Assembly (NCBI RefSeq): GCF_037042905.1
Contig: NC_087256.1
Coordinates: 12,648,001-12,712,000, forward strand
Reading direction: 5' to 3'
Length of the DNA stretch: 64,000 nt
Source: Lytechinus pictus
Taxonomy: Eukaryota
A model generated the notes under the pieces. That model did not search any database, was not told the origin of the DNA, and saw only the letters and a list, made by a program, of their open reading frames with translations. How positions within the stretch are numbered: the first letter of the stretch is position 1; each line of letters starts with the position of its first letter. Positions 48,523-60,169 of the stretch are shown piece after piece. A program made the position numbers and the translations under genes.

Positions 48523-49373
48523 TACATGTACGTCATAACGAAGCGGTTCAACTTCAAGGGTCAAGCCTATTGTATTTGTGGTGTTTACGAATGGATTGAG
48601 GGATCTACACGAGATCGGTCTGGTAAGAAACCTCTAATTTTTCATATTTATACTAAAATAATTTTAACCCCTTCATACGCATTAGGCATATGAAGGTTCA
48701 TAGATACTAAGATCTAAATATAATCAAGAGAAACAAACCGATTTCACCCTCTATAAACTCTAATTATGGATTTCCTAGGGAAATCCATCTTTGGGTTGTT
48801 TACAGTCTCGCTTATGCATATATGGCAAGCATTTCAAGGCTCCGTGATGAAAAAGTATATGTAAAAATATTTTTAAATATCATCACGGAGTGCAACATGC
48901 TCAAGGCTAAGGCAAGCCCGACCATTTCTTTCCCTTTTTTTTGTTTAGCCTTTTAGGCTATCTCCTCCTAAAGCATCACTCTCTATTTTGTCCTTGGTTC
49001 TGCCTGGCGAGTCTTCACATGGCCATAACATGGGTTCTTTGAAATTTGAGTTTTTCACTTCATCAAGAATAAGATTCAAGTTCATGAACAGCCTGGGTTC
49101 ACGATCTTGAACTGAAGTAGCCTGGAGGCTTCTGGAGAGTAAAAGTATTTCTACTGTACGTAGGCTTACTCTCCATGAAGCCTGGGACGGGATGCCATAA
49201 GGCCCACACATACAGAGTATTTTGGAGACAACAATATTGCTCCAAAATACTCCTTCTCTTTAACTTACTAATACTATACTTCTGTACATGGGCTAAAACC
49301 TAATTTCCCCCCACTAGGAAAAAATCAAATTCTTTTTACACAAAAAATAATATTATAAAATAAGTAAAATCAT
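48523..49373 (+). repeat. Unclassified interspersed repeat X, uninterrupted copy
   Basis: 48523-48915 matches 55039-55390 in direct orientation; 48798-48913 and 49119-49373 match 54836-54952 and 50616-54790 in inverted orientation once nested insertions are removed. Confidence 0.75.
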
Positions 49374-49539
49374 GTAAGAAGATGAGCTATACTAACAGAT
49401 GTTATCGTCGCCCACCCATGGGTGCATCTCTGCCGCCGTGTACAGGAAAATTGGAGGCACGGCGCATTCAACGATACTAAACATTTCCCGCAAATTTAAT
49501 AAGAGGATTTACAGAATGAAGTCCTCCTACGAAACTTAC

Positions 49540-49900
49540 CAAACGATGTGAAGTCAATTCCTCCTAATATGATGAATATCCCTCGAATAGAGTCATTTAA
49601 GCGTTGATTTTTCTTCTCGTTGACAAAATACGGCCCAACCTTGCGAATTCTCAAATTTTTTGTCTAATGAGCGAAAGAGGGCGCGCGATTTATCTTCATA
49701 TCAAAGACACTACAAGGGAAAGACGAGACACAAAAACTATCTTACACGTAAATCGATGCAAAACGTTACACGAAGTTGGCAAAGTGTCCAATCTTTTTAC
49801 TGTAAAGACTTTGGTGGAATGTTAATTGACAAACGAACGGGTAGCACTTGCGGGGCTTCGTTCAAGGTACGTAGAATTTTCTATATTTTTTGTTTAATTT
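49540..49900 (-). promoter_or_regulatory. Probable securin non-coding first exon and promoter
   Basis: Minus-strand G|GTAAGT donor at 49540/49539 in an apparently unique, CpG-containing segment between repeats; TSS cannot be determined from sequence. Confidence 0.4.
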
Positions 49901-50444
49901 GTCATCGCTTTGAATATTTTCCAAAAAGTATTATCGTCAGCAAAAATGATAAAAAATTCCTTTTTTAAATTATTGCATTTATTGGTGTCTCTATTTTATC
50001 AAACAATCATTAGAATTGCGCATACAATGAATCAAGAATCTAGTTTTAAAAATACCGGCAAGCTGAATTAAGGTTGTGAACTGTATTAGCGCCAACAACG
50101 ACCTTCCTTTTATTTCCATGGAAGAAACATGCGAAGCCACTTTCCAGGCCGAGGTAAGCGATTTTGCTTTTGTGTCCTTTTAAAATAAAAAAATATGTTA
50201 AAAATGGAATGCTTTTCACCAGAAAAAGCCCTTGTGAGCAACCCTGCTAGTGAGTAGCGGAATGGGTTTCGGCTAACATCATTCACGTTATGAAGCGATG
50301 TTAACGACAACTCTAAAATCCATCGCGTAAACACGTTGGTTGTGCGAGGTTAGTATATACTAACCTCGCAATACGTGTGAGTGGTCGTCGCCATCTTGCC
50401 GTCTTTGTTATTGTAGCCACATATACAGACTCGGTATAGAGGCA

Positions 50445-50615
50445 TGAGCAGTGCCAACTTAGATTTGAAAAAATACTTACGTCGGCCGATAAATATCATG
50501 GATTGTAAAATACTTGCATCAGTTAATAAATATCATGAAATCACTTCATGATATTTTACGATTCAGGATATCGGCCGACGCAAGTATTTTTAAAAATCTA
50601 AGTTGGCACTGCTCA
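50445..50615. mobile_element. Foldback MITE (TGAGCAGTGCCAACTTAGATTT TIR)
   Basis: Mirrored by AAATCTAAGTTGGCACTGCTCA. Confidence 0.75.
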
Positions 50616-50770
50616 TCATGATTTTACTTATTTTATAATATTATTTTTCGTGTAAAAAGAATTTAATTTTTTCCAAGTGGGGGAAATGAGGTTTTTAGCT
50701 CATGACATGTACAGAAGAAGTATAGTATTACTATTAGTAAGTTAAAGAGAACGAGTATTTTGGAGCAACA

Positions 50771-51213
50771 TAGACCAAAAGCTTCGGTCTCTGTTAAGTT
50801 GGTTGTTCCGCTGAACTCTGTTGGCTCCCACTCACCAAATACAGAGACCGAAGTTCTAGCTCGATCTGTACAGCCTACAGGGACTTAATGGCCATATATT
50901 TATGTATTAAGTTCGGATAAAACAGGGAAGTGAAGTTGCGTGACAGCCGAAGTAAGTCACTGTTTTTCCCCCGTTTTGGTGCATTTCAGGCCAAAACGGA
51001 ATAATAATCTTCATTTTAGTACAGTTCTTTTTAATATATTTTTATGAAATAAAGAAAAAAATCAATGAGCCCCGTCGAGGAGATTTTGCACTGTTAAACC
51101 CCTAATGATGGCTGCACGCTAGCGAGCCGTCTGTGTACGAGGAAAAAAAAAATGTTAAAAAACTCCTAGAAACAGATGGCTGCCAGCTGTCTAGGACTAG
51201 GACTCTAGGAGTA
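50771..51213 (+). mobile_element. Academ(H)-type non-autonomous element, copy C
   Basis: 9-bp TSD GGAGCAACA (50762-50770, 51214-51222); termini TAGACC...TGTCTA (ends 51193) followed by a 20-nt stutter; empty site visible at 49215-49252. Confidence 0.8.
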
Positions 51214-51290
51214 GGAGCAACATTGTTGTCTCCAAAATACTCGGTATGTGTGGGCCTATGGCATCCCATCCCAGGCTTCATGGAGAGTAA

Positions 51291-51720
51291 AGGCCACCGC
51301 ACACCTTACGACCCGACCAGTCGCCGACTGGCTTGAGACTGGGTGAGGGAAGATGTGACGTCACAGCTCTTGTCAGCTTCGAGTCGCAGACCGGTCAGAG
51401 ACAAGTCGCAAGGAAAATCGGAAGGATTTGACATGTCGAATCCTTATGACTGGATCGCAAGCTCAATCCAACTTCCAGCCAATCAGACAGCAGAGTTGTA
51501 CGACGCGTAAATGATGAATAACGCGCATACGCAGTAGTAAGCGCATTTTCTCAGTTGTTATGGCAAAAAGCAAAAAGCGCATGCTTGAGTCGCAGACAGC
51601 GTGGTAGTCGGATCGCAAGGTGTGCGGTGTCGAGGCTTATGACCACCTTGCGACTCATCTCCCCTCACTCAGTCGCAAGCCAGTCGCCGACCAGTCGGGT
51701 CGTAAGGTGTGCGGTGGCCT
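51291..51720. mobile_element. PIF/Harbinger MITE
   Basis: TAA|AGGCCACCGCACACCTTACGAC ... GTCGTAAGGTGTGCGGTGGCCT|TTA; empty site in the paralog near 49165. Confidence 0.85.
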
Positions 51721-52458
51721 TTAGCCTACGTACAGTAGAACCCGGGGGGGCCACTTCCATTCACGAGTGGATACCATGCGCGACCATGGGGTCTCGAAAA
51801 GCACTCTAAACACGTATTTTCTATATACTGAAAATGCACCCCTTAACAAGTATACCCAGTTGTTGTGTGTCCGGACAGGTTGTGTGTCCGGACGATCAAT
51901 TTGAGAAAGTCATTTGGAAAAATTTACAAGGGAAGTTTTATCAATTTTTAGTACAAAATGTCAGGAAATATTATAGAGAACAAAATAGAAGATGATTACA
52001 ATTATTGATTTCGTATTTTTAGTGTAATCCAAAGACAAAAAAGAAGGCTTCAAAAATATAAAGTGTCCGGATACCCGATCCCCCATCCTATTGGCGTGTA
52101 AAACCAAGGAGCTATGATATCTCCTTGGTAAAACCCTACACTTAACAAGTACTGTTGACAAGTATTCCCTGAAATGAACCCCTAAACAAGTACAGGAATA
52201 TTTTATTGTTATGTCATATGTCCTTCGGTCGTCGGTTTTACCTTTACACATCATTTGGTTTAGTACCTTCCACACCTCGCGCAAATCGGACTCTAAACAT
52301 GTAGTGTTGGGGCAAAAAGGACATCCTTTTTAACATTTTATGTTTGTTTTATCATCCCCGCAAATTTGACCCTAAACACGGAACTTTCCTAGCGAAATAG
52401 ATACCCTTTTTTCATTAATTTTGTGTTTTTGACACCCGTATCACGTTACGTACGTAAC

Positions 52459-53814
52459 TAGACCAAAAGCTTCGGCCTCTGTTATGTTGGTTGTTCAGCT
52501 GAACTCCGTTGGCTTCACTCACCAAATAGCGCGATCTGTACAGGGGACTCAATGGCCATATGTTTATGTGTATTAAGTTCGGATAAAACAGGGCAGTGAA
52601 GTTGCGCGACAGCCGAGGTAAGTCACTGTTTTGTTCCTTTTAACTTGATTTTCCACGTTTTTTGGCAATTAATGCCAAGAGGGAATATTAATTTGCATTT
52701 CGGTGGCGTTAATTTTCAAAAGTTTGATTCATTAAAGACAAAAATTGAAGAGCCCCGACCGGGGGATTTTGCATTGTAAGTCCCCTAATGGTGGCTGCAC
52801 GATAGCGAGCTGTGTACGAGGAGAAATTAAAAAAAATTAACGAAATTCCTCGAAACAGACGGCTGCCAGTATACAAATGATGCATGGGTTAGAGTGGGTC
52901 AGTAGGAACTGTGTGCACAAGGTAACTTTGGCATGGTTTAACCCACGAGGCGCAGCCGAGTGAGTTTAGACCATAATGCCAAAGTTACCGCGTGCACAGT
53001 TCCACTGACCCACGAAAGAAACCCATGCATCATCTGTTTTATAGAATGGAAAAATTTTATTGAATAAACCACAAAAATTAATGATTTACCGGATGCATGA
53101 TAATTTCATGCGTCCAGTAAATTCAATTTACTGGACGCATGAAAATATTTACTGGACGCATGATTTTTTTTACTGGACGCATGATTTTTTACCGGATGCA
53201 TGAAAATTCCAAAATGTAATGCAGACCCTTTGATAACCCTGGAAAACATAAATATGTATGCCTAACTTGATAATATGTTGGCACAAAGGCATCATTATAC
53301 CCAAAATGCCAGATACAGCTTTGCATTGAGTGATTGACTAGATCTATGAGGCAGCCATAGCTGTGTGTGTATGCCCGGGCCGCTCTGGTGGCCAGTGCCT
53401 ACGGCTGCCTGGGCCCGCACTGGAGATTTGGCTGTGCACAGCCAGCCCAGGGCAGTGCCAGTAGATCTATAAACGTTAGATCGTATGTCTGGACTTCTCA
53501 ACTAACGAGTATGCAGGCAGTTTTAATCCCTATGACATTTACGGTAACGTATTTGTACTTACAGATCATTTTGCATCCTTTATTTGATTCATTCTGCCTT
53601 GCCCTTGATCGAAAATTCAAAATTTTGACGTAAACAAGCGTAACAGTACATGCGCGATGACATCACAATGACCTTTTCGGACGATAGCTTGTTTACAGTG
53701 GATATCGTTTTGATTATCGGGATATCGTTCATGCAGCCCAGTAAAAATTCTTGCATTGCTCTCAACCAATCAGATTGCAGGGATTTTCCCATCCATTCTA
53801 TAATACTAGTAGTA
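52459..53814 (+). mobile_element. Academ(H)-type non-autonomous element, copy A (same subfamily as C), with a nested insertion
   Basis: TSD GTACGTAAC at 52450-52458 and 53815-53823; 52459-52868 aligns with copy C. Confidence 0.78.
52869..53805. mobile_element. Unclassified (possibly Crypton-like) element with a terminal hairpin, nested in copy A
   Basis: ~160-bp hairpin centred on GAGGCGCAGCCGAG; TATAGAATGG...CCATTCTATA inner IR; ~21-bp TTTACTGGACGCATGA repeats; no clear TSD. Confidence 0.5.
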
Positions 53815-53823
53815 GTACGTAAC

Positions 53824-54644
53824 TAGACCAAAAGCTTCAGTCTCTGTATTTTGGTTGTTCCGCTGAACTACGTTGGCTCCACTCACCAATACATAGACTG
53901 AAGAGCTTGGAGCCAACGTATTAAGTGAACTAACGTTTTATAGGTCGCGATTTAAAACTGTTTTTAAGCAAAATTTACAGTTTCATGGTTTCAATTATCA
54001 GGGAAATATAAATAACTTCAGTAATTGCGTACCTTGGACAGAAGTTATTGAAAAAAATCCTCTGGATGATTGAGAAATCTTTCATCTAAGACATTTTCAC
54101 CTGAGCTGAGGGTTTTTCTTGCAAGTTGCCATCTTGAATGACGTCATTATTGTTATTAACTTTTTAATGTCTCGATATATCGAATGTAGTCTGCTACCTG
54201 TGATGGTAGCGGTGTTTCGGTACGCTCGCGTATGGAGCAGATCGTATAATATCGAAAGCAATATCGATATCATATTCGTGATTGTTGACGCCCTCTCCGT
54301 TCGTTTGTAAATATTTCATAGTTTGGCTGCCATTTTGACCATTTTTATCGTGTTCAACCCAATTAAACATCGGTAAAGTATAATTTTCATGCCTTTTCAT
54401 CTATATTGTTTAAAGTATTTTGATAATGGAGTATCAAGTTTTAAAAGTTTGTTGGTTATACATCCTTAGATTGTAAATTCGATGTGTAAAATTACATCAA
54501 ACTTTGGACTGTGAATTGACAAAAGGGAGGGAATGAGAACACATGCGAGCCCACACGTACACCCTACCGTCGGTAAATGGGGATCACAGTAAAATGTCAG
54601 AAATTGTTGAATAAATCCCCAGAAACGACGGTTATTCCTGTCTA
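53824..54644 (-). mobile_element. Academ(H) internal-deletion derivative, copy B
   Basis: TSD GTACGTAAC on both sides; 53824-54150 is the reverse complement of 59070-59406, and 54190-54644 is the reverse complement of 55411-55860. Confidence 0.85.
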
Positions 54645-54946
54645 GTACGTAACGTGCCCTATCTTGAATTTTGAAAAAGACATCCTTTTTACGTGTTTTT
54701 TTGGTCGCGCATGGTATCCACTCGTCAATGTAAGTGGCCCCCCCGGGCAGTAGAAATACTTTTACTCTCCAGAAGCCTCCAGTCCAGGCTAAACTGAAGT
54801 AGAAATAGATTCTGCTCCGCGCGCTTGACGAGACGGCCGCGCCTAGTCTTGAGGACTCCATGATGATGTCTTTTAAAACAAATTTGACATATACTTCTCC
54901 ATCATGGAGTCTTGAATCCCTTCCCATACATGCATAAGAGAATCTT

Positions 54947-55033: not shown

Positions 55034-55909
55034 CTACGTACATGTACGTCATACATAAGCGGTTCAAGGGTCGTCGCCATTGTATTTGCGCTGTGTACAT
55101 GTGGAGCGAAGGATCTACACGACATCGGTCTGGTAAGAAACCTTTATTTTTACGTAGGATTTTTATTCAATATTTTTTAAAACATTCTTATTCTTAATCT
55201 TATGCATTAGGCGAAGGAAGGTGTAGAGAATAATAAAATCCTGCTAATTTTCGTGATTTTTAATAAAAAAGATGGATTTCCTGGGGAAATCCATCTGTAT
55301 TTACAAGATTCTCTTATGCATGTATGGGAAGGGATTCAAGACTCCATGATGGAGAAGTAGAGTCCTCAACTCTCAAGACTAGGCCGCGCCGCCGCCCGCT
55401 CGGAGAGGCCTAGACAGGAATAACCGTCGTTTCTGGGGATTTATTCAACAATTTCTGACATTTTACTGTAATCCCCATTAACCGACGGTAGGGTATACGT
55501 GTGGGCTCGCATGTTTTCTCATTCCCACCCTTTTGTCAATTCACAGTCCAAAGTTTGATGTAATTTTACACATCGAATTTACAATCTAAGGATGTATAGC
55601 CATCAAACTTTTAAACCATGATATTTAGTGAAGGCAATATTTTAAACGATATAGATTAAAAGGCATGAAAAATTATACTTTACCGATGTTTAATTGGGTT
55701 GAACACGATCAAAATAGTCAATATGGCAGCCAAACTGTGAAATATTTACAAACGAACGGAGAGGGCGTCAACAATCACGAATGTGATATCGATATTGCTT
55801 TCGATATTATACGATCTGCTCCTTATGCGAGCGAAACCGCTACGATCACAAGTAGCAGACGACAATCAAACGATCACTTTAGTTCAAGCAGCATAAACGA
55901 AAGGCCTGC

Positions 55910-56077
55910 ATGATGGATGCTGTAGCCAAGGGGATATTCGGGGAACACTTCACTCTCAAGCCTGACCAGCGGGAAGCGCTACAGTGTTTGGAGGACGGGA
56001 GAGACCTGTGGGTCCAGCTCCCCACTGGACATGGAAAGTCGGCGATTTTCACCGTCTTTCCGATATGGAAATCAAAG
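55910..56077 (+). pseudogene. RecQ-like SF2 helicase N-terminal fragment (transposon-borne)
   Basis: FTLKPDQREAL...GRDLWVQLPTGHGKS corresponds to the Q-motif plus Walker A; probable AAG|GT donor; no downstream helicase motifs found. Confidence 0.78.
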
Positions 56078-57638
56078 GTTATTAATTTTTTAATAGGCCT
56101 ACTTTATTATAAAATATTGGGAAAATGATAACTACCGTAGTATTAACTTTGACATTCAAAATGCAGCTTTCATCGTTTAGACCCAGATCTAGGTTTGTGG
56201 ATCACTTAAATTCAAGCAGTATAAACATATGGCCTATTTATACTACATAATCGTTTCAATTGAATATCAAATGGCACTAAAACACTTATATGATGCTATA
56301 TCTGCATACTAGTCTAACACTGAACATAAAATGAGTGAAAAAATGATTTTAACAGAAAATATTTTTATAGGTTAGAAGTTCCCATAGACCACTACTCCAA
56401 CTGACCAGACATACAGTCCCAGTTAAATCAAATACACAATTTATTACGTTTATTTACACCTTATTCTTTCTATTCTTCTTTCATTTTACACTATTTATTT
56501 TGTGTTGGGCTATTCTGATGACTGGCCACATTGAATGCATTTGTTTATTTCAATGTTTTTAAATCTTTTCTATGTGAACACTGACTGAAATTAAGTATAA
56601 CGTCGATTATTGCAATCCACACAGTCAAGTCCTGGATCTTCTCGTATAGGCCTATACGTTCAAATCGCTGTACAGAGTTGCTATGATTGTCGTCTCAGGG
56701 GGATATGAGTCAATTTTGAAAAGACATTTCCAACATCTTTATACCTATCATATTTAAATGTCTGATTAAGAAACCTTCAAACACCCCCCCCCAAAAAAAA
56801 AAAGGGGGAACAAACTCTAAGAAATGATGTTAAAATTCTGCAATAGCTATCTATTCAAAGTGTTATTTGAGGGCTCCAATTATAGGCTTTATCATCGAAC
56901 CATTCAAATTTGAAGGAAAGGGGAGTGTCTCCTTTGCGTCGCTATTATCACCACAATAGAGGCTATACTGCTTGTTTAAGACGACTCGTAATATTAGATC
57001 CATATTGACCTTTATACTCTCATGTAGGACCTTTAGGTCTAACTATTCTAAAAACGCAAAACTTTAAAGACAATCAGACCAATTAATGCTACACAGAGTG
57101 AACGCCAATTCAGATCCACCCAATCGGCTGGCAAGAAAAAAAAGGAGAGAAAGAGAAAGGAAGAAAGAAAGTGGGGTTAAAGAAGAATTATTGTCGACCT
57201 ATGTTATAATGATAATAATAATGGATGTGTAATGCGCCAAATCCACTCGGCAGGGTGCCCGAGGCGCAGTGAAAGAAAGAAAAACACAGAGAGAAAAATA
57301 CAAAGTATGTTATAATATATGAAATTATATTACGTGTATTTTTATTTCAGAACTATTTATGAAACATAATTTGCTTAAATGTTAGTCCCTACTGGTGCTT
57401 GCGTTGTCTGTTTGATGAGATAAATAATCCTGTTTAAGGAGATTAAATGGTTCTAAATCATCCCGTTTCCAAGTCCATAAATATACACCAAATATATTTC
57501 CTTGTATTCGGATTTTTCAAAATTATTGTATGTAGTGACATTGATTTTTTTTAATGACTACTACATTTGCCGCATTTAAGGTCTAAATATAAAACATTTC
57601 CAGTCCGTGCTTACGTTGACATTAGTGCATTGGCCATA

Positions 57639-58070
57639 CAGTGGCGTACCGTGTGTCACGGCATGGGGGGACCAGCAAAAAAAAAATGAGTATACTAATA
57701 GAGGCATTTTAAGGGCAGTGCCATTAAACGGATATGTATATTACTGATAAAAAATAATGCGAGCGCCAAGCGCGAGCTGAAAATCTTTGATATTCAGACC
57801 TAAAAAGGGACACAAGCATTTTTTTGTAATTATGATACGTGCCCGTCTCGCTAAACAATGCAAAACTGCTGAAATGTTTGTATTTATTGACCCCAAACAG
57901 GGACATTTTAAGGACAATAGGCCTATTTTAGGAATCCATATCCATGTACATATCTCAAAAGCTACGTTTCTCTTCCCTTCTCCCTCTTTTTCTCCTTTTC
58001 CCGTTTTTTAAATATTTTTGCCAGCCGAGGGGGGGGGGGTGCCCCCATGTCCCCCGTAGTCACTCCACTG
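57639..58070 (+). mobile_element. hAT-like CAGTGGCGTA...CCACTG element nested in copy D
   Basis: Termini and GCGAGCGC..AGCGCGAGC subterminal motifs; a related copy starts at ~61760. Confidence 0.6.
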
Positions 58071-58510
58071 ATTGGTGAGATATGTCTACTCTTCATGACA
58101 CGAGCGTAAATCCAGAGGGGGGTGGGGGTATGCATCCCCTCCCCCCACACTTTTCAACACAGAAAAAAAATATTCTTTAATTATCAAATGGTCAATAACT
58201 TTTAGTATGTGGATTTATCTTTAAATGCAGTCAAGGTGCTTAAATTGGCCAATTTTTTCCATTTTAAAGATGAAAAATTTCTCACTCGGCCGCTCTGCCC
58301 CGCGCTTAATCTAATTTGGCCTTGACAATCACTACGTTTAGCTTATTGCAGAGGTTAATTTATATCCACTGCGTAATGGGAATATGTTTATAATAATTCA
58401 ATTTTTTAATATAAGATTCCAATGACTTTTAAATATGATGATAACTATGGACCTTAAACGAATCAAACATCCTTTAAATATACACTTTCGTGAATATGGG
58501 GGAGGGGCTG

Positions 58511-58897
58511 TCATAACTTGGAATCTCTGTGGAAGCGCAGGAATTTTTCACCAAAATATAGGCTCAGTCTTCTTCGTTTCTTCCGAAGAAATGGCGAAGC
58601 ATAGCTGGTCACTTTCACTTTCCTCCCCAGGTAAACATTGATTCTACTAATTTTCTTTAATTTGGATTTATTTTCAATTACATTTGAATTGCATTCAGAT
58701 AATTTTGAAATTATTCTGCAACATCTGTCGCAAATGAATTTTTTTGATTTTTGATCTGGTGTCACTTTAATTCCCAATGATTCGACAGCGTCAGCAGTGG
58801 TGTAATCACGGTGATCCAATTTTGCATTCAAAGATCTTCTTTTATTAGGATGATTATTCAAATTACGGTCACAATTACAACACCAGTAGTCAGCCAT
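58511..58897 (-). pseudogene. ZAD-like (CxxC...CxxC) zinc-finger ORF, probable N-terminus of the transposon's second gene
   Basis: CCNC...ICDRC followed by a helical, basic tail with RKKRRR; ATG ~500 bp inside the right terminus; truncated. Confidence 0.55.
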
Positions 58898-60169
58898 AAT
58901 TACTAAAATGAATTAATGAATCAAATAAAATTACCACCAGCAATCAGCACACCTAACGTTATACATGGCAATATACGAATAAAATAATACGATACGATAC
59001 ACTACACGAAGATAAACGATACTAGTTATAATCGCGATAAATCGAGACATGAAAAAGTTAATAACGATAATGACGTCATTCAAGATGGCAACTTGCAAGA
59101 AAAACCGTCAGGTCAGGTGAAAATGTCTTAGATGACAGATTTCTCAATCATCCAGAGGATTTTTTTCAATAACTCCGGCCCAAGGTATGCAATTAGCTTA
59201 AGTTATCTATATTACACTGATAATGGAAACCATGAAAATGTCAATTTTGCCTTAAAAAAGTTTTAAATCGCGATCTATAAAACGCTAGTTCACTATACGT
59301 TGGCTGTAGGTAGGGGCCCCCTCCGCTTCAGTCTATGTATGGTGAGTGAGCCAACGCAGTTCAGCGGAACAACCAAAATACAGAGACTGAAGCTTTTGTT
59401 GGTCTAGGAGAGGCCCTGCTCCTGACCTGTGCTGAGCTGAATTTCGTTACGGTACCTTACCCGCCGCAGCTCAGCCACACCCGAGACGCCCGGCTCGAAA
59501 TAGACCGTCCACTTACCTGAAAATTAAATGATTTTGTATCGCTCTGACCGGTGTTCACGAGGAGATCATTCACAAATTCTGCAAAATTGGTGTAGAAGAT
59601 CTAGATAGGTTGTAATAACTCACAAACTAAAAAACCAGACGAGAGTTATTCGAGTCTCAAAAAAGGCAAAGACGTCCGAGGTTTTTTAAACACGCCGCGT
59701 CAATGAAAATAACAACAGCTGAAGTCGAATTCTGATTGGTGCATAGCGGTGCATGAAATTGGAACCAATAGTTTAGTGCACGGTGTATGGTATCCTCGAG
59801 ATTGTGACGGGAAAAAAAATAAACACGCAAGCAAAAATAATATGAGGATGACTTTTAACAATTGAATGTGCAGATCAGCAGAATGATTATAACAACGATA
59901 CGATAATGACATAATAAGCTGAAAATAGTAGAAATAACAGTAATAATAAAGAAGAAACTAAAATATGAATTCTAACAAAACCTTAAAACATGCCTTGCCT
60001 CATTGCCTGAAATTCGAGAAGAACAATAAAAAAACTAACATATAAAAATGCATATTTAAGTTATTAAAAGAGTAATTTATCGAGATGAATTTTTTTTAAC
60101 AAGTGCGCACCTAGTTACCATGCAATAATGCATATAGCATTTCCATTTATTTGAAAGCAAGATAAAAGA

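What the first reader, a model, noticed from the sequence alone, without database searches (positions are those of the whole stretch)
52450..54653. Two different Academ elements stacked on one target, giving a triplicated 9-bp TSD
GTACGTAAC occurs exactly at 52450-52458, 53815-53823 and 54645-54653. It separates copy A and copy B, which belong to different subfamilies and both have the TAGACC end on the left. The simplest explanation is re-insertion into the same 9-bp site next to an existing element, meaning site-specific array building rather than random integration (inference).
Basis: partly seen in the sequence, partly recalled or inferred. Interest (0 to 1): 0.72.

Follow-up and report, generated by a model that had tools for sequence, protein, structure and literature searches.

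The report
Two transposons stacked on one target
Two different small cut-and-paste transposons landed one after the other on the same nine bases of a sea-urchin-type genome, and about 70 other places in that genome show the same stacking, a habit already known for fly P elements but which I did not find reported for this transposon group.

Summary
GTACGTAAC stands at 52450, 53815 and 54645, at the edges of two TAGAC...GTCTA elements. The stack sits inside a high-copy host MITE. The uninterrupted host sequence occurs about 2,600 times in the genome and holds the 9-mer once, so both extra copies are target-site duplications made here.

"Copy A" is not a clean element. It is 408 bp of a ~445-bp MITE that has lost its right tip, then an unrelated 940-bp repeat, then a stuttered CTA-GTA-GTA junction. 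B is a complete 821-bp element of another family.

Across the genome, ends of these families lie exactly 9 bp apart far more often than at any other spacing:
- 31 of 56 tail-to-head pairs
- 20 of 27 head-to-head pairs
- 19 of 30 tail-to-tail pairs, 9 of them mixed A/B

The 9-mers differ between loci, so this is re-use of a resident element's duplication, not specificity for a sequence.

The family prefers the target GCWN|N9|NWGC, and its own tips (CTA|, |TAG) rebuild that motif beside each insertion. This and local clustering explain most of the excess. A is older than B, so A likely came first.

Double insertion is known for P, hobo and R1. This is a new member of a known kind.

The parts
51741..54747 (+). 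Host MITE that received the stack. About 810 bp without the inserts, with terminal inverted repeats at 51741-51786 and 54702-54747 and an 8-bp TSD CAGTAGAA at 51733-51740 and 54748-54755.
   Evidence: Inverted repeat I7 and the sequence itself. Its uninterrupted target region occurs 2,607 times in the genome.
52450..52458 (+). Left copy of the 9-bp target GTACGTAAC. In the empty site it lies inside the 20-bp perfect palindrome CACGTTACGTACGTAACGTG.
52459..52866 (+). Element A proper: the left 408 bp of a ~445-bp non-autonomous family (TAGACCAAAAGC...GCTGCCAGCTGTCTA). It is cut off 7-10 bp before its right tip. It is 97.3% identical to the family consensus.
   Evidence: 24 full copies elsewhere have 9-bp TSDs.
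52867..53805 (+). Unrelated 940-bp repeat (CAGTATAC...TCTATAATA, no TSD) lying where A's right tip should be.
   Evidence: At least 30 copies at 92-98% identity with unrelated flanks. A second copy abuts an A-family right tip in L003.
53806..53814 (+). Stuttered junction CTA GTA GTA. I read it as the last 3 bases of A plus two extra copies of the first 3 bases of the TSD (inference).
   Evidence: Sequence. Similar stutter or filler stands at copy C in the window (51194-51213), in L056 and in L040.
53815..53823 (+). Middle copy of GTACGTAAC, shared by A (right side) and B (left side).
53824..54644 (+). Element B: a complete 821-bp non-autonomous element (TAGACCAAAAGC...GGTTATTCCTGTCTA). It is a deletion derivative of the 4-kb element at 55411-59406. 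It is 99.3% identical to its subfamily consensus.
   Evidence: 23 full copies elsewhere have 9-bp TSDs, all different.
54645..54653 (+). Right copy of GTACGTAAC.
55411..59406 (-). 4-kb relative of B with the same ends and a 9-bp TSD (GGAGAGGCC on the + strand) at 55402-55410 and 59407-59415. It carries a first helicase exon and a 128-aa zinc-finger-like exon.
   Evidence: The 128-aa exon has at least 19 copies at 98-100% identity in the genome.
50771..51193 (+). Copy C, an A-family relative. It is followed by a 20-bp stutter filler (51194-51213). Its TSD GGAGCAACA is at 50762-50770 and 51214-51222.

Best explanation
This is a double insertion made in place.

Shown:
- A host MITE carried one copy of GTACGTAAC.
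- Two separate integrations each duplicated those 9 bases, giving TSD-A-TSD-B-TSD.

Inferred order: A, the older element, integrated first with the family's usual 9-bp staggered cut. B, the younger element of another family moved by the same enzyme, then integrated exactly into the right-hand copy of A's duplication. At some point A's right tip broke, and the break was mended with a foreign 940-bp repeat and a short GTA stutter.

Why the same 9 bases (inferred, semi-quantitative): the family prefers a dyad-symmetric target, GCWN | G-N7-C | NWGC. Its own tips read ...CTA| and |TAG.... They put the key C/W and W/G back beside each copy of the duplication, so every insertion leaves two good targets in exact register. 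On top of this, new copies cluster near old ones.

Whether transposase bound to the resident end adds a further pull is open.
For: The empty site has a single 9-mer: 2,607 genomic copies of the host sequence.

Both families make 9-bp TSDs of varied sequence (48 elements).

Spacing of ends across the genome:
- Tail-to-head: 31 of 56 pairs at exactly 9 bp.
- Head-to-head: 20 of 27.
- Tail-to-tail: 19 of 30, of which 9 are A/B pairs.
- The ratio, about 2:1.3:1.2, is near the 2:1:1 expected for random orientation at either end.
- There are 3,484 exact left ends in total.

Triple 9-mers:
- L032: head-to-head, TACCGTACC three times.
- L040: GATCTACCG three times, with one mismatch.

Target motif from 44 single insertions: C at -3 and G at +3 in 73%; G at -4 and C at +4 in 61%.

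Leave-one-out scoring:
- TSD copies beside a resident end score 32-63 times an average site.
- The window's original site scores 71 times.
- Its right copy after a first insertion scores 195 times; its left copy scores 6.6 times.

Age: A is 2.7% diverged from its consensus and B is 0.7%. This fits A first and B second, on the right.
Against: - The motif alone predicts only about 0.7 stacks among 3,484 elements, against 70 seen (my arithmetic). An extra factor of roughly 30-100 is needed.
- I take that factor from the excess of ends at other short spacings. That excess is small in number, and part of it consists of 9-bp junctions with stutter added, so the split between the two causes is rough.
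- A's right tip is missing, so its original junction with the middle 9-mer is inferred.
- The order of insertion rests on divergence and on motif score only.
- No read-level check of the assembly at the junctions was possible.
Confidence: 0.8

Rival explanations
1. End-directed homing is the main cause. Transposase bound to the resident element's tip recruits the incoming complex and places its active sites on the adjoining 9 bp. Arrays would then be built by protein guidance and not by the target motif.
For: The peak at exactly 9 bp is very sharp. Head-to-head gives 20 of 27, and several of the other 7 look like 9 bp plus stutter. Motif scoring alone falls short of the observed count by a factor of about 100, and by about 2-5 after allowing for local clustering. 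Bacterial IS26 is reported to target a pre-existing copy (abstract of PMC4894685).
Against: The motif-regeneration effect (32-63 times) multiplied by the local excess at other offsets (about 27-60 times random) comes within a factor of 2-5 of the observed counts, so no guidance is strictly required. Stack 9-mers fit the motif a little better than single sites: T1 is G in 17 of 28 and T9 is C in 18 of 28, against 22 and 17 of 44. That is what motif-driven choice predicts, and it was also seen for P elements (PMC5932611). There is no biochemical data.
Confidence: 0.3
2. Two independent chance hits occurred because the palindromic host-MITE site is itself a hotspot, with no role for the resident element.
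For: The site scores 71 times the average. The same 9-mer carries a TAGAC-ended insertion in 3-4 other copies of the host MITE.
Against: That is only about 0.15% of some 2,600 identical sites, so about 0.003 double hits are expected across all of them. Stacks elsewhere sit on unrelated 9-mers.
Confidence: 0.07
3. The stack comes from tandem duplication or unequal exchange between the two TSD copies of one element, followed by divergence. Alternatively it is a join of two haplotypes made by the assembler.
For: Same-family tail-to-head arrays with a repeated 9-mer exist, for example C1:9665065 and 9665481, and C13:23426234 and 23426687. These could have grown by unequal exchange after a first double insertion. 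Sea-urchin genomes are known to be highly heterozygous (general knowledge), and I could not check reads.
Against: A and B share only about 70 bp and belong to different families. Head-to-head and tail-to-tail stacks (39 junctions) cannot arise by unequal exchange. 70 stacks, each with its own 9-mer, are not plausible as assembly errors, and a haplotype join would still need two hits on the same 9 bp.
Confidence: 0.05

Closest known systems
TE double insertion giving tandem dimers with the TSD kept in the junction (Drosophila P element, hobo, R1, jockey; McGurk and Barbash 2018, PMC5932611)
   Same: Two insertions fall on one target, and a spacer of exactly TSD length sits in the junction. The spacer sequences fit the element's own target motif, and somewhat better than single sites do. 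The authors propose such dimers as seeds for tandem arrays.
   Different: The spacer here is 9 bp and the group is an Academ-like one in an echinoderm. Partners are often from different non-autonomous families, and all three orientations are seen in near-random proportion. The element tips themselves rebuild the target motif. The data come from one assembly, not from a population.
AcademH lineage of Academ DNA transposons (Kojima 2020, cited in PMC10045372 and PMC10799480; the paper itself was not held)
   Same: The TSDs are 9 bp; AcademH is reported to make 9 or 10 bp. A DEAD-type helicase exon is present in the 4-kb relative that shares B's ends.
   Different: No Academ transposase was tied to this family here. 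Only a first helicase exon is seen. Stacking is not mentioned in the papers I could read.
Bacterial insertion sequences that target an existing copy or form dimers (IS26 targeted conservative movement, PMC4894685; IS dimers with the TSD between copies, cited in PMC5932611)
   Same: An incoming element lands at the edge of a resident one.
   Different: Those cases rest on transposase-to-transposase or end recognition shown by experiment, in prokaryotes. Here a target-motif explanation covers most of the effect.

Membership tests
AcademH (Academ superfamily) | Target-site duplication of 9 or 10 bp | tested here: met
   48 complete A- and B-family elements have matching 9-bp flanks. One of 56 tail-to-head spacings is 10 bp. 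The rule itself comes from PMC10045372.
AcademH (Academ superfamily) | Element encodes a superfamily-2 helicase (DEAD plus Helicase_C) | tested here: inconclusive
   The 72-aa exon at 55910-56128 hits PF00270 DEAD with E 7.2e-6 and 26.3 bits against a cut-off of 26. No further helicase exons were seen in the 4-kb copies.
AcademH (Academ superfamily) | Academ-clade DDE transposase | tested here: inconclusive
   The 128-aa exon has distant relatives (P0004, P0005) that carry DUF6589. DUF6589 lies in open frames of 1,450-1,850 aa in this genome, but none is next to a copy of this family. I could not verify that DUF6589 is the Academ transposase.
TE double insertion (tandem or inverted dimer with shared TSD) | The junction spacer has exactly the TSD length and equals both outer TSDs | tested here: met
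   Seen in the window, in L032 and in L040 with one mismatch. Genome-wide there are spacing peaks at 9 bp.
TE double insertion (tandem or inverted dimer with shared TSD) | The two elements are independent arrivals, not a duplicate of one | tested here: met
   A and B belong to different families. 9 of 19 tail-to-tail stacks are A/B pairs. A and B differ in divergence, 2.7% against 0.7%.
Sequence-specific integration (fixed attachment site, as in R1, Tn7 or recombinase elements) | The same target sequence flanks all or most copies | tested here: not met
   48 different TSDs and about 65 different stack 9-mers. Only a loose motif of about 6 bits is present.
Mobile composite A+B unit | The same A-9mer-B arrangement occurs at other loci with other outer TSDs | tested here: not met
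   Only the window matches across the junctions. Hits to the 940-bp repeat stop at 53805-53808 (one runs to 53821 by chance similarity), and hits to B start at 53824 apart from one that reaches back 12 bases.

The most novel reading that the evidence does not exclude
The transposase of this family treats the tip of a resident copy as a homing signal and integrates in exact register beside it. The family would then build mixed arrays on purpose, arrays that can later grow into satellites or undergo rearrangements between facing ends. The broken and stuttered right junctions would be the scars of frequent cutting at resident ends.
Probability: 0.25. Interest if true: 0.6.

Novelty: new member of a known kind. 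Interest (0 to 1): 0.42.

Why it matters
It shows that double insertion, so far documented mostly in Drosophila and bacteria, is frequent in an echinoderm DNA transposon group: about 2% of the exact left ends abut a shared duplication. It gives a simple cause that can be tested. The element tips copy the flanks of the preferred target, so each insertion makes two new good targets. Such stacks bring transposon ends face to face and put elements in tandem, and both arrangements are known starting points for rearrangements and satellite arrays. The work also yields a target motif for this family and corrects the annotation of 'copy A'.

Tried and rejected
- Part of the element: I asked whether GTACGTAAC belongs to the elements (a recombinase-type core). 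Rejected. 48 other copies have other 9-mers, and an inverted copy of B's end at 55411 has a different flank.
- Mobile composite A+B: rejected.
- Alleles from reads: the runs offered are short assembled contigs dominated by thousands of paralogous copies. The 'skips' of about 2,190-2,215 bases are empty copies of the host MITE elsewhere, not alleles.
- Autonomous partner: the 10-kb pieces L086 and L087 hold only 4-kb derivatives. The family search for DUF6589 found giant open frames, but none beside this family.
- Kojima 2020 (PMC7165386): not held.
- The first tail-to-tail pattern was too unspecific (control 82 against 90). It was replaced by a stricter one.

Full report
**1. The observation**

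GTACGTAAC stands at 52450-52458, 53815-53823 and 54645-54653. The window has five matches where 0.12 are expected by chance. TAGACCAAAAGCTTC follows the first two copies directly. The element called B ends ...GGTTATTCCTGTCTA just before the third copy.

**2. The setting**

The window is C12:12648001-12712000 of an 812-Mb assembly.

The stack lies inside another small element, a host MITE at 51741-54747. The MITE has 46-nt terminal inverted repeats and an 8-bp duplication CAGTAGAA.

Joining the left flank, one 9-mer and the right flank gives ..ATCACGTTAC GTACGTAAC GTGCCCTATC. That string occurs 2,607 times in the genome at up to 3 mismatches. The site therefore held the 9-mer once before insertion, and everything between the outer copies was added here.

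**3. What A and B are**

B (53824-54644) is a complete member of a family with more than 40 copies.
- 23 copies that I could read have clean 9-bp duplications, all of different sequence.
- B is a deletion derivative of the 4-kb element at 55411-59406, which has the same ends and its own 9-bp duplication.

"A" is composite.
- 52459-52866 matches a ~445-bp family that begins TAGACCAAAAGC and ends GCTGCCAGCTGTCTA. 24 readable copies of that family have 9-bp duplications.
- In the window the family sequence stops at GGCTGC(CAG).
- 52867-53805 is an unrelated 940-bp repeat with at least 30 copies at 92-98% identity. It has no duplication and slightly ragged ends.
- Then come CTAGTAGTA and the middle 9-mer.

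I read CTA-GTA-GTA as the last three bases of A followed by two extra copies of the first three bases of the duplication. Other right or outer junctions of the family show the same kind of stutter or filler:
- copy C in the window (51194-51213);
- L056, with 11 bp;
- L040, with 18 bp.

This suggests a break at the tip mended by copying short pieces, here with capture of the 940-bp repeat. That is inference.

**4. Is the stack one of many?**

I searched the whole genome for pairs of family ends 0-30 bp apart.

| Orientation | Pairs found | At exactly 9 bp |
|---|---|---|
| Tail-to-head | 56 | 31 (one more at 10 bp) |
| Head-to-head | 27 sites | 20 |
| Tail-to-tail (strict pattern) | 30 sites | 19, of which 9 join an A-type and a B-type end |

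- The 9-mers differ from locus to locus, so these are separate events.
- Several non-9 spacings are visibly 9 bp plus a short internal repeat.
- At four loci the same 9-mer stands at two successive junctions, which means stacks of three elements.
- In the loci I could read, L032 has TACCGTACC three times around two head-to-head elements. L040 has GATCTACCG three times, with one mismatch.
- L034, L075, L086 and L087 show shared 9-mers as well.

With 3,484 exact left ends in 812 Mb, about 0.004 head-to-head pairs are expected at any one spacing, and 20 are seen. The ratio 31:20:19 is near the 2:1:1 expected if a second element lands at either end in either orientation. Unequal exchange cannot make inverted or mixed pairs.

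**5. Why the same nine bases?**

Forty-four single insertions give a dyad-symmetric target, GCWN | G-N7-C | NWGC. C at -3 and G at +3 are found in 73% of sites, and G at -4 and C at +4 in 61%.

The elements end ...TCTA| and begin |TAGA.... After an insertion, each copy of the duplication therefore still has C/W or W/G at the key places on the element side and keeps the already selected flank on the other side.

In a leave-one-out scoring:
- such regenerated sites score 32-63 times an average site, at about the 98th percentile;
- the window's original site scores 71 times;
- its right-hand copy after a first insertion scores 195 times;
- its left-hand copy scores 6.6 times.

That predicts a first element on the left and a second on the right. 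A is 2.7% diverged from its family consensus and B is 0.7% from its subfamily consensus, so A is likely older. The two lines agree.

The motif alone is not enough. By my arithmetic it predicts about 0.7 stacks, against 70 seen. Ends at other short spacings are about 27-60 times more frequent than random, which points to local clustering of insertions. Multiplying the two effects comes within a factor of 2-5 of the observed counts. A further pull by transposase bound to the resident end is possible but is not required.

The particular host-MITE site is only a mild hotspot. Three or four of about 2,600 identical sites carry a TAGAC-ended insertion at this 9-mer, far too few for two independent hits here.

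**6. Family assignment**

The 9-bp duplication fits AcademH, which is reported to make 9 or 10 bp (PMC10045372).
- The 4-kb relative carries a first exon with helicase motif I (PF00270, just over the cut-off).
- It also carries a 128-aa zinc-finger-like exon present in at least 19 near-identical copies, so the family is young.
- Distant relatives of that exon carry DUF6589. DUF6589 lies in giant open frames in this genome, but none is beside this family.

Membership of AcademH is therefore likely but not shown. The transposase was not found.

**7. Comparison with what is known**

McGurk and Barbash (PMC5932611) describe double insertion of P elements, hobo, R1 and jockey.
- The target duplication is kept in the tandem junction.
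- Junction motifs fit the P target better than single sites do.
- The dimers serve as seeds of arrays.

The present case is the same kind of event in another transposon group and phylum. Its own features are mixed-family partners, all three orientations, and tips that rebuild the target motif. I found no report of it for Academ in the held library; the library is partial and the key Academ paper was not held.

**8. Limits**

- Read data gave no allele information.
- The order of events at A's broken tip relative to B's arrival is unknown.
- The unique 831 bp between an element tip and a repeat of the 9-mer in L034 is unexplained.

**Verdict**

This is a new member of a known kind, of moderate interest.

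Noticed in passing
window 52867-53805; L002-L030; L003; L018: A 940-bp repeat (CAGTATAC...TCTATAATA) has at least 30 copies at 92-98% identity. It has no target duplication, ends ragged by 1-3 bases, an internal palindrome and 21-bp tandem repeats. Two of 31 copies sit exactly at an A-family right tip (the window and L003). L018 holds a head-to-tail dimer with overlapping ends. Its class is unknown; it may be captured at breaks.
   Followed up: partly
L082, L083, L084: A B subfamily carries a tandem duplicate of its first 60-72 bp, so it has two left ends. It has moved in that form: the loci have different 9-bp duplications.
   Followed up: no
L034:194-1943: GCTCCATGC occurs three times. The first lies between two direct elements, and the other two lie on either side of an inverted third element 1.3 kb away. 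831 bp of unique sequence, beginning with GCTC, follow the second element's tip. This could be a rearrangement between facing ends. It is unexplained.
   Followed up: partly
window 52442-52458 plus 54654-54656 (empty-site reconstruction): The target lies in a 20-bp perfect palindrome, CACGTTACGTACGTAACGTG, of a host MITE family with about 2,600 copies of this stretch. The 9-bp duplication is off-centre in the palindrome.
   Followed up: partly
window 58511-58897 (- strand) and genome copies: The 128-aa zinc-finger-like exon of the 4-kb element is present in at least 19 copies at 98-100% amino-acid identity. This points to very recent movement, yet no copy with a transposase was found.
   Followed up: partly
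genome C1:9665065 and 9665481; C11:6014319 and 6016352; C13:23426234 and 23426687; C2:19699542 and 19700386: At each of these four loci the same 9-mer stands at two successive junctions, so three elements are stacked on one target.
   Followed up: no
window 49122-51740 and 54748-54782: Nested transposons are layered here. An outer element with long inverted arms holds copy C, a 436-bp element with 73-nt inverted repeats (51288-51723), and the host MITE that carries the stack.
   Followed up: no
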